IMG/VR virus record: IMGVR_UViG_3300042386_001233
Location: 62,001 to 126,000 of that record
Reading direction: 5' to 3' (one strand)
Length of the DNA: 64,000 bases
The notes beneath the pieces were generated by a model that made no database searches, was not told the DNA's origin, and saw only the letters and a list, made by a program, of their open reading frames with translations. Shown here piece after piece: positions 33,897-49,100 of the stretch. Within the stretch, counting starts at the first letter, position 1. The number at the start of each line of letters is the position of its first letter. The translations under genes and the position numbers were made by a program.

Positions 33897-35221
33897 AATA
33901 TAGTTTTATTTTGATTGTTTATTAAAAGAGTTATCCAATTAAAGAACTCATCCTGTACATTCATAATACTTGTTGGTTGATAGGGGTCAATTGGTATTTC
34001 TATAACATTTGTTGGCTTAGTTAGCTTGCCAAAAAAAGCCTCTTTACAGTCGTATGTAGAAAGCAATCTTCCCATAGAATAAAAGTCATCCGGGAATACT
34101 CTTCCTTTAGCCATAGTAAATAATGGTATATTATATAAGCATGGTATATTACATCCAGAACAATTAGTTCCAACAACGCCCATACAATAGTTTTGATAAA
34201 AACAAGCCTGTTTTTCAACTGAATATGCTATTAATACTTCTTCTCCATCAACAGATTTAGCCATATTAATTTCACTATCTGTACATGCTACAATAATAGG
34301 ATATAGTCCTCTTTTTTTAATTAGAGCACAAACATCTTTTAATTGTGCCGCAGAAGCCAAACCCGCCCTACGAGTATTATCTGAGTGTATTAAGACCGCA
34401 ATATATTTTTTATTTAAAACTATACCATTAGAATTTTTAAGTAAGATTTTATTGTTTTGAAATAAATCTTTAATAATGTCTGTACCATAGATACTTGGAA
34501 ATGTATTTTTAGAAATGCATCTGGTTAATGATTGATATTTATCAAGTTCGATATTTATACTATTATTGAGGATTACTGATTCTGAGATATGGCGTATATT
34601 ATGCATCCCATGGTTCCATGTGAATATTGGAGACCAATCAACATACCATATTTCATCAAGACCCATAATTTTATTAAAAGGCTTGACAAAAAATTTGGTC
34701 TTTTGATCTAATATTAAAATGTTATAGGTATCTTTAGATATTTCTTTTTGTGTATGTTCTTTAATTCTTACTATCGCTCTTAAGCAGTCTTGGAAGTGCT
34801 CCGTGCAGATAGCATTAGCGATATAGATTGTTTGTGGCTGTTTATTGGATAGTTTTATTTTTTCTAATCTAGTAATATCGTGATTTGTTTTCATGCTCTC
34901 TATACTATGACGAAAAAACTCACGAGCTTTAATTCTAACTTCTGATACATAGTCCCCTTTAGCACTTGGGGCGAGTTGTTCGTTTCCTGTCCAGGCCCCT
35001 TCTGAATTAATAGTTCCAATATATCTATTAAGGGACCACTTATAATTACCACAGCCATGTCTATTAAAATTGTCTGTAAAATCCCAAAATAGATTTTCTA
35101 AAAAGCAATGTACGGAATCACAATGAACGCACTTATAAGAGAATTCTGATCCTATAAATAGAATTTTTTGATGATCTTCCTTTTGGCAATTAGGGCATTT
35201 AAAGGTGGTTAAAGTTAACAT
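33893..35221 (-). CDS. Zn-ribbon fused to GT-B/GT9-like domain
   Basis: CPNC..CVHC N-terminus; YIAVLIH..VVGTNCSG..IP. Confidence 0.4.
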   Translation of the reverse strand: MLTLTTFKCPNCQKEDHQKILFIGSEFSYKCVHCDSVHCFLENLFWDFTDNFNRHGCGNYKWSLNRYIGTINSEGAWTGNEQLAPSAKGDYVSEVRIKAREFFRHSIESMKTNHDITRLEKIKLSNKQPQTIYIANAICTEHFQDCLRAIVRIKEHTQKEISKDTYNILILDQKTKFFVKPFNKIMGLDEIWYVDWSPIFTWNHGMHNIRHISESVILNNSINIELDKYQSLTRCISKNTFPSIYGTDIIKDLFQNNKILLKNSNGIVLNKKYIAVLIHSDNTRRAGLASAAQLKDVCALIKKRGLYPIIVACTDSEINMAKSVDGEEVLIAYSVEKQACFYQNYCMGVVGTNCSGCNIPCLYNIPLFTMAKGRVFPDDFYSMGRLLSTYDCKEAFFGKLTKPTNVIEIPIDPYQPTSIMNVQDEFFNWITLLINNQNKTIL

Positions 35222-35904
35222 TTATTTTTAGCAGCAAACTCTAAACTTTTAATAGTGTCTGATAAGTTTTGTGTTGAGGAGTTATTATTGGTGTCTATAA
35301 AGTATTGAGCAATAGCTTCTAGAGTATTTTTTGATAAGTGCCAAGGGCTAGATATGGACTTTATATTATTAGTATTTTCAGTTATACAAAGAGACTCTTC
35401 TGATATAATTGTGTTTAAATCAATATATTGGGTCTTATTGTTTATTAGAGAAGGCTGAACCACCTCATCAAAATACATTTTTTTTCTCTCTTGAATTCTA
35501 GATCTCATGGATGTAGCACCTATATTGTGGTACATTTCTGATCTATGCCAAGCCGCAGGGGTATCAAAAATCATCATGTTCACATTTAGAGAAGATAAAT
35601 TAAGTAGAATTTCTCTCCATATTTTAAATAGAATAGAAGTTTTTTCGCATAATACTGCCGAGTTTGACCAAGCTGTTAGTACTATTATGTTGGATGGTCT
35701 TAAAGCAGAGAATAGGTAGGTGGTTCCGCACCTTCCCCATTTAACATCAAAAAAGTGATAGTTTTTATGGTTTTTCTTGAAAATCTCTTTTATCTCTAGA
35801 AGATAACAATATCCAACACCCAGAGTAAAATTACCTTCTAGTCCAACAACCTCATCCCAGTCTGAAGATGTTTTAAATTCATTGGTTAAGCTGTCATATT
35901 TCAT
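35215..35904 (-). CDS. Hypothetical protein (possibly SGNH-like)
   Basis: Coupled ORF; C-terminal YIDL..PWHL. Confidence 0.4.
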   Translation of the reverse strand: MKYDSLTNEFKTSSDWDEVVGLEGNFTLGVGYCYLLEIKEIFKKNHKNYHFFDVKWGRCGTTYLFSALRPSNIIVLTAWSNSAVLCEKTSILFKIWREILLNLSSLNVNMMIFDTPAAWHRSEMYHNIGATSMRSRIQERKKMYFDEVVQPSLINNKTQYIDLNTIISEESLCITENTNNIKSISSPWHLSKNTLEAIAQYFIDTNNNSSTQNLSDTIKSLEFAAKNKC

Positions 35905-35975
35905 GTGATATTCTCTATGTAGTTTTTAATATAGTGATTATTAAAATCGGACGATAAAGTTACGAAACTTTCCAT
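35901..35975 (-). pseudogene. 24-aa scar-like mini-ORF
   Basis: MESFVTLSSDFNNHYIKNYIENIT; GAGGT RBS; ATGA overlap with the next gene. Confidence 0.4.
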
Positions 35976-35990
35976 TTTTACCTCTTTTTC

Positions 35991-36578
35991 TTAAATATGT
36001 ACATACCAGCAAGATATTGATTTTTCAAAAACTTGGGCAGAATGGCCGAAAATCTCTTCAACCGCAGTTGAAACCCCTTTTTCTTGATAATCATGTCCTG
36101 AGACGATTCCTCCTTTTTTAATTTTAGGCAACCATGCTTCTATATCTTTTTTTACATAATCGTACCAGTGGTTTCCGTCTATAAAAACAAAATCTAATGA
36201 TTCGTTTTCAAACAATGATGCGGCAGCAGAACTATCACTTTTTATAAGTTCAACAAAATGATTACATCCAACTTTATTTAATCTATTGACAACGAAATTA
36301 TACTTGTATTCACCAAGTTTTTTTAATCTATCTTCGTCAGACAAACCTTTTGTGTCATACAAAGATTCAATTTCTTCTTTGCCTGCCCAGGTGTCAAATA
36401 AATCTACTCCGTAAATTTTTACACCATCTTTGCTTTTGATTTTTTGCGCTAAAAAACTAATTGACAAGCCAAAAAACACACCAACTTCAACAAAAGTTTT
36501 AAAATTTTGTTTTGATATGAATTCGTAAAAGCTAGAATAGTTGAAATAATTAGGTTCATTTTTTACCATTGGCAACAC
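35991..36578 (-). CDS. Class I SAM methyltransferase (Methyltransf_24)
   Basis: VEVGVFFGLS, DFVFIDGNH, GGIVSGHDY. Confidence 0.9.
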   Translation of the reverse strand: MLPMVKNEPNYFNYSSFYEFISKQNFKTFVEVGVFFGLSISFLAQKIKSKDGVKIYGVDLFDTWAGKEEIESLYDTKGLSDEDRLKKLGEYKYNFVVNRLNKVGCNHFVELIKSDSSAAASLFENESLDFVFIDGNHWYDYVKKDIEAWLPKIKKGGIVSGHDYQEKGVSTAVEEIFGHSAQVFEKSISCWYVHI

Positions 36579-36618
36579 CTCTTTTCTTGATTTATATATT
36601 AAGCCTACTTTTATTATC

Positions 36619-37449
36619 CTATACTTCCTTGTAGTTTTTAATCACACCGTTACAGAAATCATTTAAATGCGTATTTATATCAAGAACTTTAGAGCCTCCG
36701 CCATAATGAACCCAATAAAAATCTTCCGGTGCGGAGTTTGGGTCATGTGGATTTTTCAAATAAAATAGGAGAGAAGAGTCAATACCTTTAACTATCAGAT
36801 TACTATTTTTGGATGGAAGATATTCGGTCTTTATTAGTTTTGATAATGCAAAAGCCAATAATTCATCATATGAATTCCTATCCATTTGCTTTTCGTAGTT
36901 AATTAGCGATTGAGATTTTAGAGCATATACTACTCCCAAACACCATTTTTTTTGTTTTTCAACAGACCATTCTATAAGTTCTTCAATAGTAAAACCCCAA
37001 ACTTTGTAAAAGTCATTTGGATCCCATTGTTTTGTGCTTTTTATAATTTTTTCTTTAGCATCGAAGGAGCCACCGTCTCCGACCAACATTTCCGATTCTC
37101 CCAACATATCTTTTACAGCTGAGTTAAAATCAACTTTGCCAAACAAATACATGTCGGAATCAACCCAGCAAATAATTTCTTCTGGATGTTCTTTTGCAAC
37201 TTCAATGCACTTCGTAAATTTTTGCAAGTTTGAACTTGTTCTCCAAACTTTTACTCCTATATTATTCAAAAAATCCAAGTATTTAGATTCTTGTATATCT
37301 GATATTACATAGATATCTTGTGGAAGCAGCCCGCCATTTTTAATCAGTGAAACAGCGTGGGCCGCCGCAAACATCGGATAACGATATTGTCTTTCAAAGG
37401 GCGGTTCTTGGATCCACCCGGTCCATCTTGCAATCATCACTATTTTCAT
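36619..37449 (-). CDS. GT-A glycosyltransferase
   Basis: WVDSD (DxD), DE and VHY motifs. Confidence 0.55.
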   Translation of the reverse strand: MKIVMIARWTGWIQEPPFERQYRYPMFAAAHAVSLIKNGGLLPQDIYVISDIQESKYLDFLNNIGVKVWRTSSNLQKFTKCIEVAKEHPEEIICWVDSDMYLFGKVDFNSAVKDMLGESEMLVGDGGSFDAKEKIIKSTKQWDPNDFYKVWGFTIEELIEWSVEKQKKWCLGVVYALKSQSLINYEKQMDRNSYDELLAFALSKLIKTEYLPSKNSNLIVKGIDSSLLFYLKNPHDPNSAPEDFYWVHYGGGSKVLDINTHLNDFCNGVIKNYKEV

Positions 37450-37458
37450 ATTTATTCC

Positions 37459-37572
37459 TTAATTAAACCTATCAATTAGCCATTTTTCAGACCTACTATT
37501 ACTTGAGGGACCAATTAAATTACACCTAACTAAACTCTTTTTTCCAGCACATATCTGTGTATTAGTTCTCAT
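37459..37572 (-). pseudogene. 37-aa scar-like mini-ORF
   Basis: MRTNTQICAGKKSLVRCNLIGPSSNSRSEKWLIDRFN; fills the gap and overlaps the upstream gene end. Confidence 0.35.
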
Positions 37573-38191
37573 AAGAACGATAAGGGCTTTGAGTATATTT
37601 TTTGTTTTGTCTCCAGTCAACATGTATTAAATCTATATGTTCAAACAAATTAACGATAACAACGCCAGATTTTTCGGCATTTTTTCTAAAATGATTTTCG
37701 CAATGAAGAACTCCCAAGTTCCAATCTTTGTTAAAATCATAACTTATTTTTTTGTACACCCAAGCATCTTGTGAACAAATAGTAGATATGTGTTTTTTAT
37801 TGTCTGGGTTGTGATCTGCTGCTGATGGCACTATATTACCATCTTTGGTCAAATCTTTTCTTGTCAATAAGTACAGTGTTTCTTCCCATTCGTTTATTTT
37901 ATCCAAAAAACACAATGATTCATCAAAATAAACATCAGAATTAGATAGTATTTTTATATCTTCTGGATATTCTTTATCAGCATAGTCCATCCACATTTTA
38001 TAAGAAAGTCTTGTTTGTATTGGAACAACAATCAACTTTTTATTGAAAATTGTGTCAAATTCGCAATTATCAGTAAATAGAACTAGTTTGTCTATTCTTT
38101 CATTAGAAAGGTTTTGATATAAACAGTAAAGATTGTAAGTTAGAATTTCGGGTGTGGCTTTGAACCACTGGGTGAATAGTATTTTATTCAT
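37562..38191 (-). CDS. GT-A-like glycosyltransferase
   Basis: LSNSDVYFD, LTR, SQDAW, G..CEN, H motifs. Confidence 0.6.
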   Translation of the reverse strand: MNKILFTQWFKATPEILTYNLYCLYQNLSNERIDKLVLFTDNCEFDTIFNKKLIVVPIQTRLSYKMWMDYADKEYPEDIKILSNSDVYFDESLCFLDKINEWEETLYLLTRKDLTKDGNIVPSAADHNPDNKKHISTICSQDAWVYKKISYDFNKDWNLGVLHCENHFRKNAEKSGVVIVNLFEHIDLIHVDWRQNKKYTQSPYRSYEN

Positions 38192-38317
38192 TAAGTCCTC
38201 GTGCATACAACTATGTCAGCAGGTTCGGGGATGGTTTCTTTTCCGGGCATTCCTGGGTCGTACTCGCATATAGGGAACGGCTTTTCTAACCATTTCTATA
38301 TTCTGTGTGTTGCTCAT
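38191..38317 (-). pseudogene. Frame-broken remnant of a class I methyltransferase
   Basis: KPFPICEYDPGMPGKETIPEPADIVVCT matches the YDP..P.PAD.VVCTDVLEH motif, out of frame with the ATG at 38317. Confidence 0.6.
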
Positions 38318-38335
38318 GCTTACTCTCTATAAAAT

Positions 38336-38401
38336 TCAGATGTAGATAAACCACGTTTCACATCTACTCCTTTGACTTTGGTCTAATTTAAATTTTTTCA
38401 C
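38336..38401 (-). pseudogene. 21-aa scar-like mini-ORF
   Basis: GTG start overlaps the neuA stop (GTGA); ends ETWFIYI, like a Methyltransf_24 C-terminus (compare SCWYVHI at 35991). Confidence 0.4.
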
Positions 38402-39030
38402 AATAATCTGCGCATCAATTCTAAATCCTCTAGTGTATCTAGTTGAAAACTTCTATATATAGGCATATTTACTATGCCCATTTTCCCGCTATATCTCAAA
38501 CCGGATTTTATTAAGCATTCTCTTTTAGTTATATAAATAGCACCATTTTCTACCCATTTTGCCTCCACATCTTGTCTCATTGGACGAGAAGTTGTGTCCC
38601 AATTGTCTGGACTTGTATTTAAATCCCACCTAGGATTCCAGTGTTCCTCATATGCACTAAAAATTGAATCATATTCGTTTATCATATCTAAACCACGATT
38701 AATATCATCTGGCAAAATTAATGGAGATGTTGGCTGAATAAAAACCAAGATGTCAAAATCTTGAAGACTAGCAAAGTGCAACAATGCTTCTTCGCTTTTG
38801 GATTTGTCTCCTGAAATATTTTCTGGTCGTTTAACTACATTAGATCCTAATTGCATGGCAACGCTAGCAATTTTATCGCAATTAGTGCTAACCCATACAT
38901 CATTGGCTTTGGATGCTTTGGCTGCGTCTATTGTATACTGGATTAAAGGCTTGCCATTAATATCAATGATATTTTTACCTGGTATGCCTTTGCTTCCTCC
39001 TCTAGCTAATATAAGTGTTTTTATATTCAT
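38398..39030 (-). CDS. neuA: Acylneuraminate cytidylyltransferase (CMP-nonulosonate synthetase)
   Basis: ILARGGSKGIPGKNI, QPTSPL, RQD, ENGAIY, LDTLED. Confidence 0.93.
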   Translation of the reverse strand: MNIKTLILARGGSKGIPGKNIIDINGKPLIQYTIDAAKASKANDVWVSTNCDKIASVAMQLGSNVVKRPENISGDKSKSEEALLHFASLQDFDILVFIQPTSPLILPDDINRGLDMINEYDSIFSAYEEHWNPRWDLNTSPDNWDTTSRPMRQDVEAKWVENGAIYITKRECLIKSGLRYSGKMGIVNMPIYRSFQLDTLEDLELMRRLL

Positions 39031-39036
39031 AATGTT

Positions 39037-39081
39037 TTATTTTATTTCTTTTACTCCCCAAATGTGTAGTACTTTTTTCAT
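39037..39081 (-). pseudogene. 14-aa scar-like mini-ORF
   Basis: MKKVLHIWGVKEIK resembles a methyltransferase start (KKVLH) joined to a C-terminus. Confidence 0.35.
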
Positions 39082-39087
39082 TTATTT

Positions 39088-40122
39088 TTAAGCCACTTTA
39101 TATTTTTTAAATATACTTGTATAACCAGATAAAGACTGCTTGCTTAAAATCTGGCATGTTTTTATTATGTTTTCACGCACGCTTTCGTTATTTTCTAAAT
39201 AGTATTTAGTTAAATTATAAATTTCGTTAATTTGTTCATCTAATAATGGAAATGTAAAAACGACAGGGTTTTTATACTCTAGTATTTTTTGGATGTGCAT
39301 AGTTTTATCACTATTACTTTCAAAAAATATACAAGGAGTTCCATTGAGAGATGCCATTATTGATGGATGAAATCGTCCAGAAATATAAACCTGAGCCATT
39401 TGTAGTTCTTTCATTCCCTGGTCTATATCACATTCTTTCGGTATTAATTCAAAGCCATGATCTTTAGCCAATTGTTCCATCCAATAATCTCCACCGCAGT
39501 TTTGCACTAATTTTACTTTTGCTAGTCCAGAAATCTTATCTATTAATTTTAAATATGATAATTTTTTATTTTCTATTTGATCATGATTAGGAGGAGATGA
39601 TCCCCCGCCCAGCAAAATATAATCTCCTGTTTTTATTCTGTGAGATTGCCAAGTAAACAACGCATCCGGGATATATGAATAGTCTAATTTGCTATCAATT
39701 AAATAACCCGAAATCGGATCTCTAATCACCAATTCACAACACTTAGACCAAGCTTTAAGTGCCCTATTATACGTTTCGTTATCAAAAGGAGTCTTTGGGC
39801 ATTTTGAAATCATTGCATTGACATATAAACATTTTTTGTTTATTTTGCCACAATATTCAATAACCATTAGATGTTTATCAAAATCATTCCTAATAGGAGA
39901 TCTAAATATTGGACTTCCTTCTCCATTAATTATTACTATGTCACATTCTTTTATATTTTTTTCTATTTTTGTAAAATCAGTTTTTATCAGTTCATTATTG
40001 CCAATCTTTAAAATTTTATCGGGTTTTAAAGCAGATTGTATTATTTGTAACAATGCTTTTGGAGTGGATCGACACCCCCAATTAAGCTGGTCTACATTAT
40101 ACCCTATATATAAAATTTTCAT
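39088..40122 (-). CDS. Polysaccharide pyruvyl transferase-like protein
   Basis: NWGC, IINGEG, IRDPIS, PDALF, ISGRFH..IMA...GTP. Confidence 0.8.
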   Translation of the reverse strand: MKILYIGYNVDQLNWGCRSTPKALLQIIQSALKPDKILKIGNNELIKTDFTKIEKNIKECDIVIINGEGSPIFRSPIRNDFDKHLMVIEYCGKINKKCLYVNAMISKCPKTPFDNETYNRALKAWSKCCELVIRDPISGYLIDSKLDYSYIPDALFTWQSHRIKTGDYILLGGGSSPPNHDQIENKKLSYLKLIDKISGLAKVKLVQNCGGDYWMEQLAKDHGFELIPKECDIDQGMKELQMAQVYISGRFHPSIMASLNGTPCIFFESNSDKTMHIQKILEYKNPVVFTFPLLDEQINEIYNLTKYYLENNESVRENIIKTCQILSKQSLSGYTSIFKKYKVA

Positions 40123-40943
40123 TTTCTTAAACTACCCCTCTTTATTTTTTCATTTTCAAATAATATTCTTGGACCAATAGGATATTTTGTAGAATTTTCT
40201 ATATCCCTAATGCCTTTTACTAACTTAAATACACCAGCAGGCTCCAAACTACTTAAATGGTCACTACCCCACATATTATGATTCAATGTAATGTGCCTCT
40301 CGATCCATTCTGCTCCTATTGCTACGGCAGCAAAAGTAGAAACTAATCCATATTCATGGCCACTATAACCTATTTCTTTATTTTTCCATTTATTTTTAAG
40401 CCATTTGATATAGTTTAAGTTTATTTCTTCTACCGGACAAGGATATGTACTATTAGTATGCATTATAATGTCTGGATTGCATTCGTTTATACATCTACTT
40501 ATTTCTTCTTCAGTGCTCATGCCCGTAGAGATTATAAGTGTTTTGAATTTATTTCTAACATATTTACACAAATCTAAGTCTGTGATAGAAGCAGATGCTA
40601 TCTTAGTAATGTCTGAGTATTTGCTCATGATTTCAGCGCTGGGTTTGTCCCATACACTAGCAAAAAAAATAATATTTTTATTGTCAGCGTATTCTTTAAT
40701 TTCTTTAATTTGTGCTTCTTCAAACTCTATCTTTTTTTTGTAGTCTAGATAAGACATGTCTCCCCAAGTAGTAGATCTAATTTTATTTTTTTGATTTTCT
40801 GGAACACAAAGCTCTGGAGTTCGTTTTTGAATTTTTACAAAATCACACCCAGCAATAGACGCTATGTCTATTAATTGTTTGCATATATTAGCATCGCCAT
40901 TATGATTAATGCCTATCTCGGCTATGATTTTAGTTTTAAACAA
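40119..40943 (-). CDS. neuB: N-acetylneuraminate/nonulosonate synthase (no SAF domain)
   Basis: IAEIGINHNG, VKIQKR, KIASA, STGMS, HTNSTYP, GYSGHE, IERHITL, GSDH. Confidence 0.95.
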   Translation of the reverse strand: MFKTKIIAEIGINHNGDANICKQLIDIASIAGCDFVKIQKRTPELCVPENQKNKIRSTTWGDMSYLDYKKKIEFEEAQIKEIKEYADNKNIIFFASVWDKPSAEIMSKYSDITKIASASITDLDLCKYVRNKFKTLIISTGMSTEEEISRCINECNPDIIMHTNSTYPCPVEEINLNYIKWLKNKWKNKEIGYSGHEYGLVSTFAAVAIGAEWIERHITLNHNMWGSDHLSSLEPAGVFKLVKGIRDIENSTKYPIGPRILFENEKIKRGSLRK

Positions 40944-41223
40944 GGGTATTGTCCCGTTCTGTCTCTATGGGTTCTAAAAATATTACTCCGCGCCTTGCTC
41001 CTGCGGCTTCTTCATTGTATCTGTAGACGTATTTGTCTTTGCCATATACTATATCAAAAAATTGGATGACTGGTGGGCCGAATCTACACATATACTCTGT
41101 TGTTATTCCTTCAAAACTTCCAGTTTCTAATAGTAAATCAGGCTTATGCTTTTCAATTAGTTTACTATATTCTGCTTGTAAGAAGTAATCTCCATTAAAA
41201 GGATTTAACCCTAATGTATTCAT
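40936..41223 (-). pseudogene. Internally deleted methyltransferase-like gene
   Basis: LLETGSFEGITT SAM-binding start joined directly to a terminal segment; the central DxH region is missing; only 95 aa. Confidence 0.5.
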
Positions 41224-41243
41224 GTGTTTAATTCCTTATTATT

Positions 41244-41963
41244 TTACTGTACTGTGTTTTTGAAAAATTTTAAACCTGTTATTAAACTATTTGGTGTGCC
41301 GTTATATACCGATACGCCTCTTTTTTCACACAATTCGCCATACTCACGGTATGAATTATTCATTTGATTCAGTATATTTTTTTGTCTTTCAAGATCTGAA
41401 TCGTTACAAACGCCTCCACGGCCCGTAAACCAAAACCACTCATTATACCCCATCCTAGACAAAACACTCTGAGATTCATCATAAAAATGTTTTGTTTCAC
41501 CAATATGGTTTACCCAACTATGATCTATTCCCATAACAAGTACTTGGTCAATGCTCTCTTGCTTAGCAACATAATAACCCATTTGCAAACCAATCTGAGC
41601 TATAGTTTCATAATGTCCCATGCGGTTTGGTATAGTTTCTGGGAATTGTCCATCATTATCCCAATAAATAACTTCATTATTTACAAATAAATTGTTATTT
41701 GTAACAATATGCTTATCCTTGATATGAATTAATACTTTTGTTTTTTTGTTTACACAAGTTTCACACTCTTTAAACCACGCAACTCCCATTTCATAAGTAA
41801 TAGGATGGTGCAAATGTCCAAAAATATGATACTTTACATTCATATTCTGAAATTCTGGGTGAACAAAAAAATTACTAATTGTAACACAAGGATTATCTTT
41901 TATTTTTTTTAAATCTTGGTCCTTAATAGATGGGCCGCAAGCAAATACATAGCAAGTTTTCAT
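41244..41963 (-). CDS. Maf/DUF115-like (nonulosonate) transferase
   Basis: CYVFACGPSI..DL, ISNF, MGIDHSW, HFY, VYNGTP.S. Confidence 0.65.
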   Translation of the reverse strand: MKTCYVFACGPSIKDQDLKKIKDNPCVTISNFFVHPEFQNMNVKYHIFGHLHHPITYEMGVAWFKECETCVNKKTKVLIHIKDKHIVTNNNLFVNNEVIYWDNDGQFPETIPNRMGHYETIAQIGLQMGYYVAKQESIDQVLVMGIDHSWVNHIGETKHFYDESQSVLSRMGYNEWFWFTGRGGVCNDSDLERQKNILNQMNNSYREYGELCEKRGVSVYNGTPNSLITGLKFFKNTVQ

Positions 41964-42038
41964 ATATAATATTTTTTATAAGTTTTTATTGTTTCGTTAA
42001 AGTAATCATCATATATTGTTTTTAATGGTAATATTTCA

Positions 42039-42110
42039 TTATACATACTCAATGATGTATACTCTTGATGCATTACAACATTTCGCAATTATCAACAAAT
42101 AGTACTTCAT
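42039..42110 (-). pseudogene. 23-aa scar-like mini-ORF
   Basis: MKYYLLIIAKCCNASRVYIIEYV; ATGA overlap with the epimerase stop. Confidence 0.3.
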
Positions 42111-42958
42111 TTATGCCTCATGTGAAACTTAATTGTTTTGGACAGCCCATAATCCATATCAGTGTAATCAAATTTAAAGTTAGTATTTTTTGGAGAGTTA
42201 GCCGAAACAATTTGTTTTGAATTGTTGTATTTTATATCTATGCTCCTATTCATCTTATCCATAATAAGTTCATGTAGATTTTTTATTGTTATTGTATTCT
42301 TTGTATTAAAAACTATCTTATTACAATACACATTATTGTTTAAAAGGTGTTCTACTATTTTCAATATGTCATCTATGTATAATAAGTTAACTTGAGTTTT
42401 TTCATTACAATCAACAAATACTTTATCGTAGTTAGAAATCTTAAATATGGAAGCAGGAACAATCCTACTTTGTTCGCTAAATAAATCGTGCTCTCCATAG
42501 GCATTAGTCAAAAAAAGACACAATATCTTTATTTGTTCGGAGTAAGCTTTGATATAATAGTCTAAAACTTTCTTTGATAACAAATACCCAGAGTTGTTTT
42601 TTATCTCTGATAGATGAACATCACTTTCACTATATTGTTCGGCATCTCCGAAAACTCTGTATGTTGAAAATACTACTAATTTTGTTTTGAATTTTGAGCA
42701 CACAGAAAAAACATTGTGTAGAATTTTGTTGTTTCTTTCAAATATTTCTAAGTCATCAATATTACCTATGGAACTGCCGACCACTCCAGCACAGTTGATA
42801 ACGACTGTTGGCCTTATGCTATTAAGGTAAACAAACAATTCTTCATAATTTTCTAAGTTCAGATTGTCATTATAAAATACTTGGGAGTTGAATTTGCTTA
42901 TGAAATTCTTGCCAAAAAAGCCCCTTGATCCCAATATTAAAACTTTTTCTGCGTTCAT
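42107..42958 (-). CDS. NAD-dependent epimerase/reductase (GDP-L-fucose synthase-like SDR)
   Basis: GSRGFFG, VINCAGVVG, YLLSK, TNAYGEHD. Confidence 0.85.
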   Translation of the reverse strand: MNAEKVLILGSRGFFGKNFISKFNSQVFYNDNLNLENYEELFVYLNSIRPTVVINCAGVVGSSIGNIDDLEIFERNNKILHNVFSVCSKFKTKLVVFSTYRVFGDAEQYSESDVHLSEIKNNSGYLLSKKVLDYYIKAYSEQIKILCLFLTNAYGEHDLFSEQSRIVPASIFKISNYDKVFVDCNEKTQVNLLYIDDILKIVEHLLNNNVYCNKIVFNTKNTITIKNLHELIMDKMNRSIDIKYNNSKQIVSANSPKNTNFKFDYTDMDYGLSKTIKFHMRHK

Positions 42959-43674
42959 GTCTTTATAGCAAAAGCTACTCCGTAACCAATCTCAGTAAAA
43001 CAATAATCAGTTAAGTTATTATGTTTGCTTATTACAGATTTCCATACATCTAATAAATAGCGGTGTTGAGGATGAGATATGTCATCAAAAACAAGAACTC
43101 CACCCACAGAAAGATAAGGTATAACATCTTCTAAATCTTTGGTTGCCCCCTCCGCAGAGTGATCTCCGTCTACGGTAATTAAATCAAATTTCAAATCTGA
43201 ATTTGTATTAAAAAAAGACGGTAATGTTTCATGACTGTTGCCGTTGATAAAATGAACTTTGCCACAATGTTCATGACGAGATAATTCTTGTTGTACAAAA
43301 TTTGATCCGGGATTATCCATATTGGCATAATTAGACACCCACATATCAAAAGCACAAATATCAACCGAAGGACATCCTCTTACAACAGTGCACGCAGACC
43401 GACCACGACGAACCCCTATTTCTAAATAATTTTTTGGCTTTAAAACTTTAGAAGCAGAGTATAATACATTGATAATATCCAAATAGAACCAATTTTTTCC
43501 ATAAAGATTAATACATTTGTTATACCATCTGTCAAGATATTTAACATAATCGTCTGTTGCTAATTGACGATGAAAAGATAGAATCTCTTGCCATGTTTCA
43601 TGGCTAGATGCTATATTAACCAAAGTAGCAGGATTCAAAAAAGCTTCACCGTAAAATTTTTTAGTCATATTCAT
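42955..43674 (-). CDS. Class I SAM methyltransferase (Methyltransf_24)
   Basis: YLEIGVRRGRS, FDLITVDGDHS, GGVLVFDD. Confidence 0.9.
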   Translation of the reverse strand: MNMTKKFYGEAFLNPATLVNIASSHETWQEILSFHRQLATDDYVKYLDRWYNKCINLYGKNWFYLDIINVLYSASKVLKPKNYLEIGVRRGRSACTVVRGCPSVDICAFDMWVSNYANMDNPGSNFVQQELSRHEHCGKVHFINGNSHETLPSFFNTNSDLKFDLITVDGDHSAEGATKDLEDVIPYLSVGGVLVFDDISHPQHRYLLDVWKSVISKHNNLTDYCFTEIGYGVAFAIKT

Positions 43675-43711
43675 TTCCTTTAAGAAATCTTCTATCGTTC
43701 CAAGAACTCAT
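43661..43711 (-). pseudogene. 16-aa scar-like mini-ORF
   Basis: MSSWNDRRFLKGNEYD; TGATG coupling upstream and overlap with the next ATG. Confidence 0.3.
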
Positions 43712-44421
43712 CAACATTTCTCCTTTGTCAAAAATTCTTCAATTGTAATCAAATTCAAGTAATAATTTCTTTTTGCGGCAAATTTATTGAACTCATAAAA
43801 AGGATTATCAAATTCGCAACACTTTTGACTTCCTTTTTTTATTATGCCCACCCCCATATCTTCGGTGTTCACAGAGTACATCTCTAAATCTGGTCTTGTT
43901 ACTCTCATCTTGTAGAAAGTTTTCCAAACAGTTCCATTCCAATATCCCAAATTAAAACCATAAGTGACTTTGTCAAATTGATTTGTTGAGACTTTGTACT
44001 GATAATCTTCTCGGGCAGTATGAATAGTTGCTGGATTTATGTCGTGAACTACAATTATCCCAGACGGACTCAGGTGGTTTAAGGAATTTAGTATGTCTTT
44101 TTCAACTTGCTCAGCAAGATGCAAGCCGTCAATAAATATTATGTCCCACTTATAATCTTTGTTTAAGTCCAAAGAACCCATATCAAGTAATTCAAAGAAT
44201 TTATCTGATGTAAATTTGTATGTTATTTTGTGATATTCTTCTGCAATTTTAGGATCATAATATTTTTCGTGTCCAGGGTCCACGGAATGTTTTGTGGGAC
44301 ATTCTATTTTATTAAAACATTCATCCGGTATTCTGACCCCTATTTCTAGATAGTTTTTGAATTTTTTGGTTTTTATCAAGTAATTTATTATATCATTTCT
44401 CCACATCACAATTGCCTCCAA
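43711..44421 (-). CDS. Class I SAM methyltransferase (Methyltransf_24)
   Basis: YLEIGV, SVDP, DIIFIDGLH, IVVHD, WNGTVWK. Confidence 0.9.
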   Translation of the reverse strand: MEAIVMWRNDIINYLIKTKKFKNYLEIGVRIPDECFNKIECPTKHSVDPGHEKYYDPKIAEEYHKITYKFTSDKFFELLDMGSLDLNKDYKWDIIFIDGLHLAEQVEKDILNSLNHLSPSGIIVVHDINPATIHTAREDYQYKVSTNQFDKVTYGFNLGYWNGTVWKTFYKMRVTRPDLEMYSVNTEDMGVGIIKKGSQKCCEFDNPFYEFNKFAAKRNYYLNLITIEEFLTKEKC

Positions 44422-45316
44422 AGATATTGTAGAACATAGTTCCTGGTTTTATTTTTAACTTCATATCAGTATTAATGTATAATTTTGCATTGTTCTTATC
44501 CATCATCTCTCTGTGTAGGTTTATATGGTCATTATCGTCTGTTGGTTCTGAAAAATTTCTGGCATCAACACCTACATTGCATTTGCTGTCTTGACAAATT
44601 CCACACTTGTGCAAGCCCAAGTAGCTGCAACCCTTCATGCTCTTTAATCTGTATAGTCCCATGCCATTGAAACAAGACTGAACTGGTACTAGTTTGTCAT
44701 TTGATCTAGACGCTTCAAATATAATTTTACTGAATGTCTTTGTGTGTTGTCTGTAGTCCTGCTTCGGATAATAGCAAGTAGAAAAAACATTATTGGCAAA
44801 ATACGAGTCTTTGTGTCTTAATGCCCAGTAATCAAAGTAGTAAAAATCTTCATTGATACAACCCATCATGTCCCATTCATCAAGATCGTATTGAAAGCAT
44901 GTTAAAATTCCATCAATGCTTATCTCCCAAAAAACTTCATCTAAATCACAGTGCAAAGCATACTCATAAGTATTTTCTAGGCTGTTTTCAAATATGTATT
45001 TTAGAATAGAGTTTCTACAATAAGCTAATCTTTGTGTTCTAGAAGGCATTGTGTTTGCTAGACCATCTTCCAAGATGATGTGTTTTTTTATTTTGCTGCT
45101 ACTTTTTTTCCAATCTTTTAGTAGATTTCTTGTTTTGTCTGATGAATCATTTTCAAAAATAATGCACAGTACATTATCAAAAACATCAGATATCTTGTCA
45201 ATATTTGAAAAAGACTTTGCGAAATGTTCTTCTATGTTCCTTATTGAACCATAGATGATCAAGTTTGTTTTTTTAACCTTGTTTTTAGCTTCGTCTGGAG
45301 ATGATATTTTTTTCAT
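44393..45316 (-). CDS. GT-A glycosyltransferase (CAP59/GT69-like)
   Basis: IFENDSSDKT, RLAYCRN, DLD, DYWALR, VQSCFNG, H. Confidence 0.75.
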   Translation of the reverse strand: MKKISSPDEAKNKVKKTNLIIYGSIRNIEEHFAKSFSNIDKISDVFDNVLCIIFENDSSDKTRNLLKDWKKSSSKIKKHIILEDGLANTMPSRTQRLAYCRNSILKYIFENSLENTYEYALHCDLDEVFWEISIDGILTCFQYDLDEWDMMGCINEDFYYFDYWALRHKDSYFANNVFSTCYYPKQDYRQHTKTFSKIIFEASRSNDKLVPVQSCFNGMGLYRLKSMKGCSYLGLHKCGICQDSKCNVGVDARNFSEPTDDNDHINLHREMMDKNNAKLYINTDMKLKIKPGTMFYNIFGGNCDVEK

Positions 45317-45347
45317 ATTTGTAGATTAGAAACCCATGTTTTTCTGC

Positions 45348-46157
45348 TTATGTTGAGAAATATTGGATTACTTTATTGTTAAAACTTTCTTTTCTATTGT
45401 ACTGATGAATAATTGAATACACCTTATTCAGATTGTCTGTGATTTTGATTCCGTCAATATTAATTCCATGACTATTGATTAGCTTATCAGAAAAACCAAA
45501 ACCAGCAGCTAACATCAGGCTAAAATTACTAGGAGCAAATTGATAGTTATAAGGATAAGGATATTGTTTAGAATAGATTATTTTCATTAATATTCCTTGG
45601 TCTGATCCGGTAAAACAACGATGTGTCTTATCGTGTTCAGAAACAATTAGACTACAAATAATATCTAAAGAAGTTTTGTCTCCTGCAATTATACCACTAT
45701 TAATTATTGGCTCTTCTATAAAACGATCTGCTATCTCATAACCATAAACATTTTTAATAATGTCATAATTCCACTGTATATCTTTAATTAAAGCATTTTC
45801 AGACGACAAAACCAACCCAGATTGATACGTTTCTAAGTCTAAGAAAGGATCTTTTTGCAAATAAACATCTGTGCAATCACTCAGTATTATATGGTGATAC
45901 GTAGTTTGACTAAGGTATTCTTTATATGCTTGAAATCTATCTATATAAAGGCTATCGATTTGTTTCTTGATTTTGACAATTGAAACATCGTAATCTTTTG
46001 CAAATTCTTTTATCTCTTCTCCCGAACCATCGTCAGAAGCATCTAGCAGAACAGTATCAAAGCTTTTATTTTTTAAGGAATAAGAGCTCTTTATAAACAC
46101 CTTTATTCCTTCAAGAGATTTTACGTTATAAAAATAACCAATTAATAAGTTTTTCAT
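45348..46157 (-). CDS. GT-A glycosyltransferase
   Basis: RF..Y, LSDCTDVYLQKDPF, INSGIIAG, DQG, HQYNR. Confidence 0.75.
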   Translation of the reverse strand: MKNLLIGYFYNVKSLEGIKVFIKSSYSLKNKSFDTVLLDASDDGSGEEIKEFAKDYDVSIVKIKKQIDSLYIDRFQAYKEYLSQTTYHHIILSDCTDVYLQKDPFLDLETYQSGLVLSSENALIKDIQWNYDIIKNVYGYEIADRFIEEPIINSGIIAGDKTSLDIICSLIVSEHDKTHRCFTGSDQGILMKIIYSKQYPYPYNYQFAPSNFSLMLAAGFGFSDKLINSHGINIDGIKITDNLNKVYSIIHQYNRKESFNNKVIQYFST

Positions 46158-46789
46158 AGTTTACCAATCCAATTATTTAAAAATTGATTTATAACCCTTG
46201 TTCTATTGTGTAGATAAATTCCCCAGTATTTATTATTTTTTTGTGATTCCTCCAAAGAAAACTCTGGCATACTTTGGGAAAGATCATATGTCCGAATATC
46301 CAAGTTTTTTTCCTCTTCTATCGTACTTTTACATAAATTACAGTTTAGTATAAGATGCATTTCAAATTTAAGCTTGGGATTTTTTCTAGTTAAAAATTGA
46401 TAAATGTTTTTTGACAACTTTATTTCATCTAGTTGCTCTGGTGTTGGCTTTGTTTTTAAAGAGGAACAATCAAAATGATGGTTAGAAGAATGGCCCAGCC
46501 TAATGAAAAGTAACTCATCGTTAACGGAATCTATTAATTGAAACAATCTCTCAATTCTTCTTTCATATTTTGTAATGTCTTTAGGAAAAGAATCATGCAT
46601 AAAGCGAATATAGTCGGTAGAACTTTCTCCATCGTTAGGGAAAAAATTATCGAACTTATTTTCCAATAAAATATCTATTCCATAGTAAGAAACTACCCAA
46701 TCAAAAGGATACGCTTCTTGTCTTATATTTTTATCTTTAAAATAACTGGCTAAAGAACAGTCTACGCCTAAAGATACTATGTGTTTCAT
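46154..46789 (-). CDS. DUF1796 putative papain-like cysteine peptidase
   Basis: SLGVDC, R..AYPFDW, F.H, KYERRIERL, LFIR. Confidence 0.8.
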   Translation of the reverse strand: MKHIVSLGVDCSLASYFKDKNIRQEAYPFDWVVSYYGIDILLENKFDNFFPNDGESSTDYIRFMHDSFPKDITKYERRIERLFQLIDSVNDELLFIRLGHSSNHHFDCSSLKTKPTPEQLDEIKLSKNIYQFLTRKNPKLKFEMHLILNCNLCKSTIEEEKNLDIRTYDLSQSMPEFSLEESQKNNKYWGIYLHNRTRVINQFLNNWIGKL

Positions 46790-46803
46790 TTATAAATACC
46801 TGC

Positions 46804-48838: not shown

Positions 48839-48841
48839 AAA

Positions 48842-49090: not shown

Positions 49091-49100
49091 AATTGACTCC

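What the first reader, a model, noticed from the sequence alone, without database searches (positions are those of the whole stretch)
38398..41963. Phage-encoded nonulosonic (sialic-like) acid module: NeuB, NeuA, Maf-like transferase and pyruvyl transferase
Seen: clear NeuB and NeuA motifs next to a Maf/DUF115-like ORF. Established: NeuB makes and NeuA activates nonulosonates, and Maf proteins transfer them to flagellin. No NeuC or Pse/Leg precursor genes are in the window. Inference: the phage sialylates its virion proteins or remodels the host surface, using a host or unaminated (KDN-like) precursor.
Basis: partly seen in the sequence, partly recalled or inferred. Interest (0 to 1): 0.6.

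Follow-up and report, generated by a model that had tools for sequence, protein, structure and literature searches.

The report
Phage-encoded Kdn-type sialic acid pathway
A complete 244-kb lake-water jumbo phage carries its own genes to make, activate and transfer a sialic-acid-like sugar (most likely the non-aminated form, Kdn), which explains why the usual precursor genes are missing and points to a gene set shared by many uncultured aquatic phages.

Summary
Window 38398-41963 (minus strand) encodes five tightly packed genes:
- a CMP-nonulosonate synthetase (NeuA)
- a polysaccharide pyruvyl transferase
- a short NeuB that lacks the SAF domain
- a 95-aa methyltransferase-like remnant
- a 239-aa protein with no direct Pfam hit, which is a divergent DUF115/MptE-like protein. 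Its best structural match is the catalytic domain of Maf (Z 11.7).

The window lies in a complete 243.8-kb tailed-phage genome with terminal repeats, from lake water. NeuC is absent from the whole genome.

Three results point to a phosphosugar, Kdn-type route:
- NeuA carries the arginine (Arg179) that was shown experimentally to make the Prymnesium enzyme Kdn-specific. Neu5Ac and Pse enzymes have Leu, Phe or Ile at that position.
- A ~100-aa HAD phosphatase lies beside the short NeuB in 25 of 36 related viral loci. The same domain is fused to NeuA in 105 of the 120 best cellular hits.
- This phage has one copy of that phosphatase, 31 kb from NeuB and outside the window.

The proposed pathway is Man-6-P + PEP → Kdn-9-P → Kdn → CMP-Kdn → transfer by the DUF115-like enzyme.

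The acceptor (virion proteins or host surface) is unresolved. My literature searches found no description of such a viral pathway.

The parts
38398..39030 (-). NeuA: CMP-nonulosonate synthetase (210 aa, no C-terminal domain). It has Arg179 at the Kdn gatekeeper position.
   Evidence: PF02348, E 3.3e-26. PDB 9t4z, the Prymnesium CMP-Kdn synthetase, 2.4e-33. Arg179 aligns with PpNeuA Arg196, whereas Neu5Ac/Pse enzymes have L/F/F/I there. The Arg is conserved in viral relatives.
39088..40122 (-). Polysaccharide pyruvyl transferase family protein (344 aa). Its start overlaps the NeuB stop by 4 nt.
   Evidence: PF04230, E 1.1e-13, 52.1 bits against a cut-off of 25.3, covering profile positions 9-279 of 280. 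CsaB equivalog is only 22 bits. No PDB sequence match. Found next to NeuB only in this phage and identical contigs.
40119..40943 (-). Short NeuB-family nonulosonate (or nonulosonate-9-P) synthase (274 aa, TIM barrel only, no SAF/AFP domain).
   Evidence: PF03102, E 2.4e-64. NeuB_NnaB 209 bits versus PseI 155 bits. Aligns with 1vli, 8h2c and 6ncs, and the aligned His, Glu and Lys motifs are kept. Sits in an all-viral clade.
40936..41223 (-). 95-aa ORF, probably a remnant of a Methyltransf_24-type gene.
   Evidence: No family hit. Weak BLASTP match (E 0.004) to the N-terminus and SAM-motif region of the neighbouring methyltransferase at 35991-36578.
41244..41963 (-). DUF115/MptE-like protein with a sialyltransferase-type fold (239 aa): the proposed CMP-nonulosonate transferase.
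   Evidence: Five of 10 homologues hit PF01973. Atlas neighbours are MptE-like/WaaZ clusters. AF2 model against Maf 5mu5: Z 11.7; Cst-I 7.6; GT29 enzymes 6-7. Homologues lie beside NeuB and NeuA in a phage contig and in a bacterial genome bin.
37562..38206 (-). 214-aa protein just downstream of NeuA, probably another virus-type glycosyltransferase.
   Evidence: No Pfam, PHROG or NCBIfam hit. ESM Atlas feature score 0.98 to viral 'putative glycosyltransferase' clusters.
42107..44421 (-). SDR sugar epimerase/reductase (42107-42958) and two Methyltransf_24 methyltransferases (42955-43674, 43711-44421), directly upstream of the module.
   Evidence: PF01370, E 5.5e-22; PF13578, E 3.2e-18 and 7e-10.
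32240..53933 (-). The ~22-kb glycan island that contains the module. It holds GT-D-like, CAP59-like, CHGN/GT2, GT64, Gly_transf_sug and RgpF-like transferases, a third Methyltransf_24, and DUF1796. None has a predicted membrane segment.
   Evidence: Pfam scans. Hydropathy scan of all ORFs.

Best explanation
The phage encodes its own cytoplasmic pathway for a nonulosonic acid that has no N-acyl group at C5, most likely Kdn. The pathway starts from a host hexose-6-phosphate rather than from a UDP-sugar.

Proposed steps:
1. The short NeuB condenses PEP with mannose-6-phosphate to give Kdn-9-P (inferred).
2. A ~100-aa HAD phosphatase removes the 9-phosphate (inferred from linkage and fusion). It is encoded at genome position 134308-134625, 8.3 kb beyond the window's end and 31 kb from NeuB.
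3. NeuA makes CMP-Kdn. The enzyme family is shown; Kdn specificity is inferred from the gatekeeper Arg179.
4. The 239-aa DUF115/Maf-fold protein transfers the sugar to an acceptor. The fold and the conserved gene linkage are shown; the activity is inferred.

The pyruvyl transferase, the methyltransferases and the many soluble glycosyltransferases of the surrounding 22-kb island would build and decorate the rest of the glycan.

The genome has no flippase, polymerase or membrane-bound initiating transferase. The glycan is therefore either assembled directly on proteins in the cytoplasm, with virion proteins the most attractive target, or fed into host membrane machinery.
For: Enzyme identities.

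No NeuC, NanE, PMI-II or NTP_transferase gene in the complete genome.

Kdn gatekeeper:
- Phage NeuA Arg179 aligns with full posterior confidence to PpNeuA Arg196.
- Mouse, V. cholerae and N. meningitidis CMAS and a fifth NeuA (9ftb) have L, F, F and I at that column.
- PMC12934254 shows that R196L switches PpNeuA from Kdn to Neu5Ac, and states that Arg there is found only in Kdn-specific enzymes.
- The Arg is kept in all close viral NeuAs.

Phosphatase:
- A mini-HAD with all four HAD motifs lies within 6 kb of the short NeuB in 25 of 36 non-identical viral loci, against 1 of 36 cellular loci.
- It often directly abuts NeuB or NeuA.
- The same domain is fused to the C-terminus of CTP_transf_3 in L061 and in 105 of the 120 best cellular hits.
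- Its nearest solved relative is a phage sugar-bisphosphate phosphatase that removes a terminal phosphate: 9iqw AfhF, profile E 2e-23 (PMC13326640).
- This genome has exactly one copy (hmmsearch E 1.3e-21).

Precedent: the Man-6-P to Kdn-9-P to Kdn to CMP-Kdn route is biochemically established in B. thetaiotaomicron and P. parvum (PMC6200933).

Transferase:
- Fold match to Maf, Z 11.7.
- Homologues at 58% and 41% identity sit beside NeuB and NeuA in a phage contig and in a bacterial bin near LPS heptosyltransferases.
- Related jumbo phages have a GT29 sialyltransferase (PF00777, E 9.8e-17) or another MptE-like gene in the equivalent place.

Soluble machinery: no island protein has a predicted membrane segment, and no ORF in the genome has more than three, the only three-segment one being an 83-aa ORF.
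Against: - No enzyme was assayed, and the NeuB substrate is not established by sequence. NeuB falls below both the NeuB_NnaB and PseI equivalog cut-offs. I could not place it against characterised Kdn-9-P synthases, because no reference sequences were available to the tools.
- In this phage the phosphatase is not in the NeuB cluster. It lies 31 kb away among other sugar genes (DegT aminotransferase, ATP-grasp) and is only 32-37% identical to the NeuB-linked copies, so it may serve another pathway here.
- The phosphatase could act before NeuB (hexose-6-P to free hexose) rather than after it.
- The HAD subfamily (EcbF/BcbF/AfhF type, sub-threshold NCBIfam hits) differs from the KdsC-type Kdn-9-P phosphatase of Bacteroides.
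- The paper notes that the trout CMAS prefers Kdn despite having Leu at the gatekeeper position, so that residue is not the only determinant.
- The genome also encodes GlmS and an aminotransferase, so an aminated sugar is not excluded.
- The acceptor is unknown.
Confidence: 0.55

Rival explanations
1. Bacterial-type route. NeuB condenses PEP with a free N-acylated hexosamine (ManNAc, or a Leg/Pse precursor) supplied by the host's own NeuC/LegG/PseG-type enzymes, and the phage makes CMP-Neu5Ac, CMP-Leg or CMP-Pse.
For: - NeuB scores best against the N-acetylneuraminate synthase model (209 bits) and also matches PseI (155 bits).
- The best NCBIfam hit for NeuA is PseF (105 bits).
- The genome carries GlmS, a DegT aminotransferase and SDR dehydratase-like genes elsewhere.
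- Source databases label the homologues 'N-acetylneuraminate synthase'.
Against: - All those scores are far below the equivalog cut-offs.
- No NeuC/LegG homologue (PF02350) or NanE exists anywhere in the complete genome. PseG and PseH were not searched for. The neighbours listed for related loci show no such gene either.
- NeuA has Arg where every N-acyl-nonulosonate enzyme in the PDB has a hydrophobic residue. In PpNeuA that Arg clashes sterically with the 5-N-acetyl group (PMC12934254).
- The NeuB-linked, NeuA-fused phosphatase has no role in the non-phosphorylated route.
Confidence: 0.2
2. The acceptor is the host surface rather than the virion. CMP-nonulosonate and the other phage-made sugars are added to host LPS, capsule, S-layer or flagellin during infection, for example to block superinfection or mask receptors.
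For: - The closest bacterial homologue of the 239-aa transferase lies with NeuB and NeuA next to GT9 heptosyltransferases, in what looks like an LPS-core locus.
- Atlas neighbours include WaaZ-type Kdo transferases.
- The island points the same way as the early/metabolic genes (RNR, dCMP deaminase, PhoH), not the structural modules.
Against: - The genome has no flippase, polymerase, ligase or initiating phosphoglycosyl transferase: no island protein has a membrane segment and no genome ORF has more than three.
- Glycosyltransferases acting on lipid-linked intermediates are often peripheral, so this is weak evidence.
- There is no lysogeny marker to suggest long-term serotype conversion; no integrase search was done.
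Confidence: 0.35
3. The sugar genes serve DNA hypermodification, that is, glycosylation of modified bases, as in T-even and RB69-like phages.
For: - The nearest solved relative of the mini-HAD is AfhF, from a phage DNA-arabinosylation pathway (PMC13326640).
- The island adjoins dCMP deaminase and ribonucleotide reductase genes.
Against: - No thymidylate-synthase/dCMP-hydroxymethylase homologue is present in the genome.
- A CMP-nonulosonate pathway, O-methyltransferases and a pyruvyl transferase have no known role in DNA modification.
- The mini-HAD is fused to NeuA in many bacteria.
Confidence: 0.03
4. The region is host DNA mis-assembled into a viral contig, or a recent non-functional passenger.
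For: The enzymes are of cellular type, and short NeuB homologues occur in aquatic bacteria and archaea.
Against: - The genome is closed by terminal repeats.
- The identical island occurs on three further IMG/VR contigs. All sampled words of the stretch are present in 24 lake-water runs dated 2018-2024.
- GC content is uniform with the flanks.
- NeuB belongs to a deep clade that is viral apart from two Woesearchaeota-bin contigs (SH-aLRT 100).
- All ORFs except the 95-aa remnant are intact and tightly packed.
Confidence: 0.02

Closest known systems
Kdn pathway of Bacteroides thetaiotaomicron and Prymnesium parvum (Kdn-9-P synthase, Kdn-9-P phosphatase, CMP-Kdn synthetase; PMC6200933, PMC12934254)
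   Same: A NeuB-family synthase, a HAD phosphatase and a CTP_transf_3 synthetase, with no NeuC. The phage NeuA is closest in the PDB to PpNeuA and shares its Kdn gatekeeper Arg.
   Different: - It is encoded by a virus.
- NeuB lacks the SAF domain.
- The phosphatase is a ~100-aa EcbF/BcbF/AfhF-type HAD, not a KdsC-type enzyme, and in this phage it is unlinked.
- The substrates are untested.
Maf flagellin nonulosonate glycosyltransferases (e.g. Magnetospirillum Maf, PDB 5mu5)
   Same: Best fold match of the 239-aa protein: Z 11.7 over 189 residues of the Maf central domain. It belongs to the DUF115/MptE-like superfamily and is linked to NeuB and NeuA.
   Different: It is 239 aa against 632 aa, has no N- or C-terminal Maf domains, has no direct PF01973 hit, and the phage has no flagellin context.
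GT42 and GT29 sialyltransferases (Cst-I 2p56; mammalian ST3Gal, ST6Gal, ST8Sia)
   Same: A shared Rossmann-like sialyltransferase fold (Z 5.9-7.6). A related jumbo phage carries a true GT29-family gene beside NeuA and the HAD (PF00777, E 9.8e-17).
   Different: Only about 10% identity and no sequence-level match. The Z values fall in the range where fold similarity alone is weak evidence.
Predicted Kdo pathway of the giant viruses CroV and Fadolivirus (PMC9614988)
   Same: A virus-encoded ulosonic acid route with the same logic (synthase on a sugar phosphate, then phosphatase, then CMP-activating enzyme), embedded in a large glycogene cluster.
   Different: That pathway makes an eight-carbon Kdo with a KdsA-type synthase in eukaryotic viruses. 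This one uses a nine-carbon NeuB-type synthase in a tailed phage.
Phage HY126 AfhF and the EcbF/BcbF capsule biosynthesis phosphatases (PDB 9iqw; TIGR01689)
   Same: The closest relatives of the mini-HAD (profile E 2e-23; Foldseek E 1.4e-5). They are small cap-less HADs that remove a terminal sugar phosphate.
   Different: AfhF acts on arabinose 1,5-bisphosphate for DNA modification. The viral mini-HADs found here are linked or fused to NeuB and NeuA.
Virion glycosylation in mycobacteriophages (Freeman et al. 2023, as cited in PMC12619734) and in giant viruses (PMC9614988)
   Same: Virus-encoded soluble glycosyltransferases that decorate capsid, tail or fibril proteins.
   Different: None of the reviews and papers I searched reports a nonulosonic acid. 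Virion glycosylation has not been shown for this phage.

Membership tests
NeuB family (PF03102) nonulosonate synthases | TIM-barrel NeuB domain above the Pfam gathering score | tested here: met
   217.5 bits against a cut-off of 22.1, covering profile positions 1-236 of 241.
NeuB family (PF03102) nonulosonate synthases | Conserved motifs of the catalytic core, including the two His residues that bind the metal in solved NeuBs (their role is stated from general knowledge) | tested here: met
   The motifs iiaEiginHnG, vKiQ, igySgH and ierH are identical or conserved in the alignments to 1vli, 8h2c and 6ncs.
NeuB family (PF03102) nonulosonate synthases | C-terminal SAF/antifreeze-like domain of canonical NeuB, PseI and LegI (~340-350 aa) | tested here: not met
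   The protein is 274 aa and the ORF ends at the barrel. The short form is shared by viral and many aquatic cellular relatives (272-300 aa) and by the 290-aa PDB chain 6ncs.
N-acetylneuraminate synthase (TIGR03569) or pseudaminic acid synthase (TIGR03586) equivalogs | Score above the curated equivalog cut-off | tested here: not met
   209 bits against 399.65, and 155.3 bits against 340.25. Neither product can be assigned by this test.
CMP-nonulosonate synthetase (CTP_transf_3, PF02348) | Cytidylyltransferase domain above the cut-off, with close solved homologues | tested here: met
   92.9 bits against 22.6. 9t4z at 2.4e-33 and 1qwj at 2.8e-32.
Kdn-specific CMP-sialic acid synthetases | Arginine at the position of PpNeuA Arg196, in the pocket that holds the C5 substituent | tested here: met
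   Phage Arg179 aligns to it. The Neu5Ac/Pse-type PDB homologues have L, F, F and I. The Arg is conserved in viral relatives. The functional meaning comes from PMC12934254.
Kdn pathway (phosphorylated route) | Synthase uses Man-6-P and gives Kdn-9-P | not testable with these tools
   This needs an enzyme assay, or a phylogeny that includes BT1714 and the P. parvum enzyme. Neither sequence was available to the tools.
Kdn pathway (phosphorylated route) | Dedicated sugar-phosphate phosphatase | tested here: inconclusive
   A mini-HAD is present once in the genome, is linked to NeuB in 25 of 36 viral loci and is fused to NeuA in many bacteria. However, it is unlinked in this phage, belongs to a different HAD subfamily from KdsC-type Kdn-9-P phosphatases, and its NCBIfam and Pfam hits are sub-threshold.
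Maf (motility-associated factor) flagellin glycosyltransferases | MptE-like/DUF115 domain (PF01973) | tested here: inconclusive
   The protein itself has no hit. Five of 10 homologues hit, best E 5e-6. Atlas and fold evidence agree with the superfamily.
Maf (motility-associated factor) flagellin glycosyltransferases | Multi-domain architecture of about 600 aa, with N- and C-terminal domains flanking the catalytic domain | tested here: not met
   It is 239 aa and aligns only to residues 272-512 of the 632-aa 5mu5 chain.
Maf (motility-associated factor) flagellin glycosyltransferases | Genomic association with flagellin or flagellar glycosylation genes | tested here: not met
   The neighbours are sugar-modifying genes of a phage island. 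Homologue contexts are phage or LPS-type loci.
Polysaccharide pyruvyl transferase (PF04230) | Domain above the gathering score over nearly the full profile length | tested here: met
   52.1 bits against 25.3, profile positions 9-279 of 280. The CsaB equivalog is not met (22 bits against 213).

The most novel reading that the evidence does not exclude
A large, long-established lineage of aquatic jumbo phages builds its own 'viral sialome'. A four-enzyme route independent of NeuC takes host mannose-6-phosphate to CMP-Kdn, using a SAF-less NeuB, a ~100-aa HAD phosphatase and an Arg-gated NeuA. Interchangeable sialyltransferase-fold enzymes (DUF115-like or GT29) then cap methylated and pyruvylated glycans that are assembled directly on virion proteins. 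This would give phage particles an acidic, variable glycan coat comparable to giant-virus fibrils.
Probability: 0.3. Interest if true: 0.8.

Novelty: new variant of a known kind. Interest (0 to 1): 0.62.

Why it matters
Nonulosonic acids are known as products of cells: animals, some algae, and bacterial and archaeal surfaces. Viruses are known mainly as users or destroyers of them. My searches of the literature, including a comprehensive 2022 review of giant-virus glycans, found no described viral pathway for a nine-carbon ulosonic acid.

Here the pathway sits in a complete phage genome. Its NeuB belongs to a deep clade that is viral apart from two Woesearchaeota-bin contigs. That clade has many members: 39 IMG/VR loci, and all 120 listed protein clusters from metagenomes are at least 69% identical.

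If the Kdn reading is right, it gives three things:
- a compact enzyme set with simple substrates for making CMP-Kdn
- a functional assignment for a widespread ~100-aa HAD domain that is fused to many bacterial 'NeuA' proteins
- a concrete, testable case of phages making acidic glycans for their particles or their hosts, with consequences for adsorption, aggregation, grazing and defence in lakes

The variable transferase (DUF115-like here, GT29 in a relative) and the different genomic position of the module in related phages suggest diversifying selection of the kind seen at O-antigen loci.

Tried and rejected
- Direct family scans of the 239-aa ORF (Pfam, PHROGs, NCBIfam), a tblastn against 50,697 phage records and a profile search of PDB sequences all found nothing. 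Foldseek against the PDB gave no match at E<=0.001; MptE and Cst-II were the only rows with high probability. The fold was resolved only by VIA-align and the Atlas.
- DNA-level search of the phage collection found one short 69% match. The NeuB protein search found 3 of 50,697 records. The large terminase subunit is at most 26% identical to that of any isolate, so there is no cultured relative.
- I looked for Pse/Leg/Neu precursor genes across the genome: NeuC, NanE, PMI-II and NTP_transferase are absent. PF02719 gave only weak hits inside ordinary SDRs (GMD and a fucose-synthase-like gene). I rejected a complete Pse or Leg pathway.
- I tested whether the 341-aa protein in the NeuB-NeuA slot of relative L095 is a diverged pyruvyl transferase. 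It shows no similarity.
- The promoter and terminator scan of the island gave counts at chance level, so it does not define an operon.
- A functional NeuB phylogeny with characterised NeuB, LegI, PseI and Kdn-9-P synthase anchors could not be built, because the tools offered no reference sequences. Plasmid hits supplied only PseI-labelled genes at about 30% identity.
- The 'moraphage' lineage of freshwater jumbo phages (PMC12619734) is a possible home for this genome, but I could not test membership.
- Not used, because no claim depends on them: read laying, complex prediction, the search of protein representatives.

Full report
**What is at the coordinates**

Window 38398-41963 holds five minus-strand ORFs with 4- and 8-nt overlaps or gaps of 20-57 nt.
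- 38398-39030 is a 210-aa cytidylyltransferase of the CMP-sialic acid synthetase type (PF02348, E 3.3e-26).
- 39088-40122 is a polysaccharide pyruvyl transferase family protein (PF04230, E 1.1e-13).
- 40119-40943 is a 274-aa NeuB (PF03102, E 2.4e-64).
- 40936-41223 (95 aa) and 41244-41963 (239 aa) have no hit in Pfam, PHROGs or NCBIfam.

NeuB scores 209 bits on the N-acetylneuraminate synthase model and 155 bits on the PseI model. Both are far below the equivalog cut-offs, partly because the protein stops at the end of the TIM barrel and has no SAF domain. The motifs conserved in the alignments to solved NeuB, PseI and SpsE structures are intact. The 95-aa ORF resembles only the N-terminus of a neighbouring Methyltransf_24 gene and is probably a remnant.

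**The 'Maf-like' ORF**

Four other lines of evidence recover it.
- The protein has ten metagenomic homologues at 41-98% identity, with invariant GPS, SNFFVH and GIDHSW motifs. Five of them hit PF01973 (best E 5e-6).
- ESM Atlas feature neighbours (0.95) and structure neighbours (TM 0.83) are MptE-like, DUF115 and WaaZ Kdo-transferase clusters.
- An AF2 model (pLDDT 83.9) matches the Maf glycosyltransferase of Magnetospirillum best: Z 11.7, rmsd 3.9, 189 residues, chain residues 272-512. Next come archaeal MptE (8.0), Campylobacter Cst-I (7.6) and mammalian GT29 sialyltransferases (5.9-7.1). Foldseek alone was inconclusive.
- A 58%-identical homologue lies four genes from NeuA and NeuB on a PhoH-bearing phage-like contig. 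A 41%-identical one lies two genes from NeuB and NeuA in a bacterial genome bin, beside GT9 heptosyltransferases.

The protein is therefore a minimal DUF115/Maf-fold enzyme that is genetically tied to nonulosonate synthesis. It is not a Maf in the strict sense. It lacks the flanking domains of the ~600-aa Mafs and has no flagellin context.

**The genome**

The window is bases 62001-126000 of a 243,821-bp virus record with direct terminal repeats and 35.6% GC. The genome encodes a large terminase subunit, portal, tail proteins, RIIA, DNA ligase, a class II ribonucleotide reductase, dCMP deaminase and PhoH. The terminase is at most 26% identical to that of any isolated phage. All sampled words of the stretch occur in 24 lake-water metagenome runs dated 2018-2024, so this is a persistent freshwater jumbo phage.

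The five genes sit in a ~22-kb island (window 32240-53933). The island holds at least six further glycosyltransferase-like genes, three Methyltransf_24 genes, an SDR and a DUF1796 protein. Elsewhere the genome encodes GlmS, GDP-mannose 4,6-dehydratase, another SDR, a DegT aminotransferase, UDP-galactopyranose mutase, an ATP-grasp enzyme and more transferases. No island protein has a predicted membrane segment. No ORF in the genome has more than three, and the only three-segment one is an 83-aa ORF. The phage therefore has no flippase, polymerase or membrane-bound initiating transferase of its own.

**Why there is no NeuC**

NeuC is absent from the whole genome, as are NanE, type II PMI and sugar-1-P nucleotidyltransferases. 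Two findings give a coherent alternative.

The first concerns NeuA. Its best solved relative is the Prymnesium parvum CMP-Kdn synthetase. That enzyme's Kdn specificity depends on Arg196. The R196L mutant prefers Neu5Ac, and the authors report that Arg at this site occurs only in Kdn-specific enzymes (PMC12934254). In the HMMER alignment, at full posterior confidence, phage Arg179 occupies that column. Mouse CMAS has Leu, the V. cholerae and N. meningitidis enzymes have Phe, and a fifth NeuA has Ile. The Arg is conserved in every close viral NeuA and in most cellular NeuAs that accompany short NeuBs.

The second concerns a phosphatase. When I compared relatives, a ~100-aa ORF kept appearing beside NeuA or NeuB. 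It has the four HAD motifs: DxDxT, T..RG, K and DD.
- It lies within 6 kb of the short NeuB in 25 of 36 non-identical IMG/VR loci, but in only 1 of 36 loci from cellular genome bins.
- In that one bin it is fused to the C-terminus of NeuA.
- A search with the HAD part of that fusion found 265 proteins. Of the 120 best, 105 are CTP_transf_3-HAD fusions of about 335-365 aa, in bacteria such as Rhodocytophaga, Rhodocyclus and Lachnospiraceae.
- Its nearest solved structures are phage HY126 AfhF (profile E 2e-23; Foldseek E 1.4e-5, TM 0.66), 1xpj and BT0820. AfhF is an Mg-dependent phosphatase that removes the terminal phosphate of arabinose 1,5-bisphosphate (PMC13326640).
- NCBIfam places the family nearest the EcbF/BcbF capsule biosynthesis phosphatases, below threshold.
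- This phage has exactly one copy, at genome 134308-134625. That is 31 kb from NeuB and 8.3 kb beyond the window's end.

A phosphatase tied to NeuB and NeuA has no role in the classical bacterial route. It is the middle step of the phosphorylated route, Man-6-P + PEP to Kdn-9-P to Kdn to CMP-Kdn, which has been shown biochemically in B. thetaiotaomicron and P. parvum (PMC6200933). Taken together with the Arg gate, Kdn made from host mannose-6-phosphate is the most economical reading.

The weak points:
- The synthase substrate is inferred.
- The phage's own HAD is unlinked and only 32-37% identical to the NeuB-linked ones.
- The phosphatase could act before the synthase rather than after it.
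- The gatekeeper residue is not the sole determinant in all species.

**Distribution and evolution**

The short NeuB has 39 relatives on IMG/VR contigs. All 120 listed 90%-identity protein clusters from metagenomes are at least 69% identical to it. Only 3 of 50,697 deposited phage records carry it.

In a maximum-likelihood tree of 71 sequences, the window's NeuB falls in a 13-member all-viral clade (SH-aLRT 100). That clade lies inside a 30-member clade with 28 viral sequences and two from Woesearchaeota-labelled bins. The whole group is nested among SAF-less NeuBs of Pelagibacteraceae, Flavobacteriales and DPANN archaea. The short form is a trait of this wider family, not of viruses alone.

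Two related jumbo phages share core genes at 50-83% identity with this genome. They carry NeuB (71-76%), NeuA (64-67%) and the HAD at a different genomic position, and with a different transferase: a GT29 sialyltransferase family gene in one (PF00777, E 9.8e-17) and another MptE-like gene in the other. The pyruvyl transferase accompanies NeuB only in this phage. So NeuB, NeuA and the HAD form a conserved core, while the transferase and the decorating enzymes vary.

**What receives the sugar**

Sequence cannot settle this.
- The fully soluble machinery and the protein-glycosyltransferase-like fold favour direct glycosylation of proteins in the cytoplasm. Virion proteins are the obvious candidates, by analogy with mycobacteriophage capsid and tail glycosylation and with giant-virus fibrils (PMC12619734 citing Freeman 2023; PMC9614988).
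- The LPS-type context of the bacterial homologue and the WaaZ-like neighbours keep host-surface remodelling open.
- DNA glycosylation is unlikely, because there is no dCMP-hydroxymethylase-type gene.
- Mis-assembly is excluded by the terminal repeats, the replicate contigs and the viral clade.

**Novelty**

The enzyme families and the Kdn route are known. Four things appear to be new, as far as my searches reach:
- A tailed phage encodes the pathway.
- A widespread viral module combines a SAF-less NeuB, a mini-HAD and an Arg-gated NeuA.
- The mini-HAD, free-standing or fused to NeuA, gets a functional reading.
- Sialyltransferase-fold enzymes are interchangeable within the module.

The closest viral precedent is the predicted Kdo pathway of CroV and Fadolivirus (PMC9614988). 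I rate it a new variant of a known kind, with interest 0.62. Confidence is 0.55 for the full mechanism. It is about 0.9 that the module is a genuine phage-encoded nonulosonate synthesis, activation and transfer set.

Noticed in passing
Outside the window: genome G000:C1:134308-134625 (-), = L006:9308-9625: A 105-aa minimal HAD phosphatase with all four HAD motifs, present once in the genome. Its homologues abut NeuB or NeuA in 25 of 36 related viral loci and are fused to NeuA in many bacteria. The nearest solved structure is the phage HY126 arabinose-1,5-bisphosphate phosphatase AfhF.
   Followed up: yes
window 32240-53933: A ~22-kb island of soluble glycan genes: GT-D-like, CAP59-like, CHGN/GT2, GT64, Gly_transf_sug and RgpF-like transferases, three Methyltransf_24 genes, an SDR, and a DUF1796 papain-like protein. 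None has a predicted membrane segment.
   Followed up: partly
L095:13052-13660 (related 207-kb jumbo phage scaffold): A 202-aa GT29-family (eukaryote-type) sialyltransferase homologue (PF00777, E 9.8e-17), directly after NeuA and the mini-HAD. tblastn with it also hits four more viral NeuB loci (L023, L027, L031, L040).
   Followed up: partly
L061:6799-7890 (Myxococcota genome bin): NeuA with a C-terminal mini-HAD domain. 105 of the 120 best hits to that domain are such fusions (~335-365 aa). Other fusion partners are SDR dehydratases and NUDIX. On viral contigs there are HAD-cupin (L031) and HAD-kinase-like (L023) fusions.
   Followed up: partly
Outside the window: G000:C1:152306-153307 (-): A 333-aa protein 76-78% identical to genes annotated PF25216 Volactin (an actin homologue) in the two related jumbo phages. 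A RuvB-like AAA+ gene lies next to it. It may be a phage cytoskeletal protein.
   Followed up: no
window 3-5684 (+) and genome 13704-33068 (+): Very large ORFs in the structural arm: the window begins inside a 2660-aa protein, and the genome also encodes a 6454-aa protein and several of 1100-2100 aa.
   Followed up: no
Outside the window: G000:C1:221558-229552: A second sugar cluster beside the terminase: GlmS (606 aa, GATase + 2 SIS), a GT2, a GDP-fucose-synthase-like SDR, GDP-mannose 4,6-dehydratase and a sigma-70 region-2-like protein.
   Followed up: partly
Outside the window: G000:C1:128541-138683: A third sugar cluster: GT1, an IMPDH/GMP-reductase-like gene, GT2, a DegT aminotransferase, an ATP-grasp enzyme, Fringe-like and GT92-like transferases, and UDP-galactopyranose mutase. 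The GT1-IMPDH pair is syntenic in relative L095.
   Followed up: partly
window 38398-41963: All sampled 31-mers of the stretch are present in 24 lake-water metagenome runs from 24 studies dated 2018-2024. The phage population appears stable and recurrent in fresh water. These samples may include the source sample.
   Followed up: no
L059, L060 (Woesearchaeota-labelled genome bins): Their NeuB genes fall inside the otherwise viral clade (57-60% identity to the window's NeuB). These contigs may be mis-binned viral DNA, or a virus-host transfer.
   Followed up: no
window 40936-41223: A 95-aa ORF overlapping the NeuB start by 8 nt that looks like the N-terminal stub of a SAM-dependent methyltransferase. 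In relative L096 an intact Methyltransf_24 gene sits next to NeuB.
   Followed up: partly
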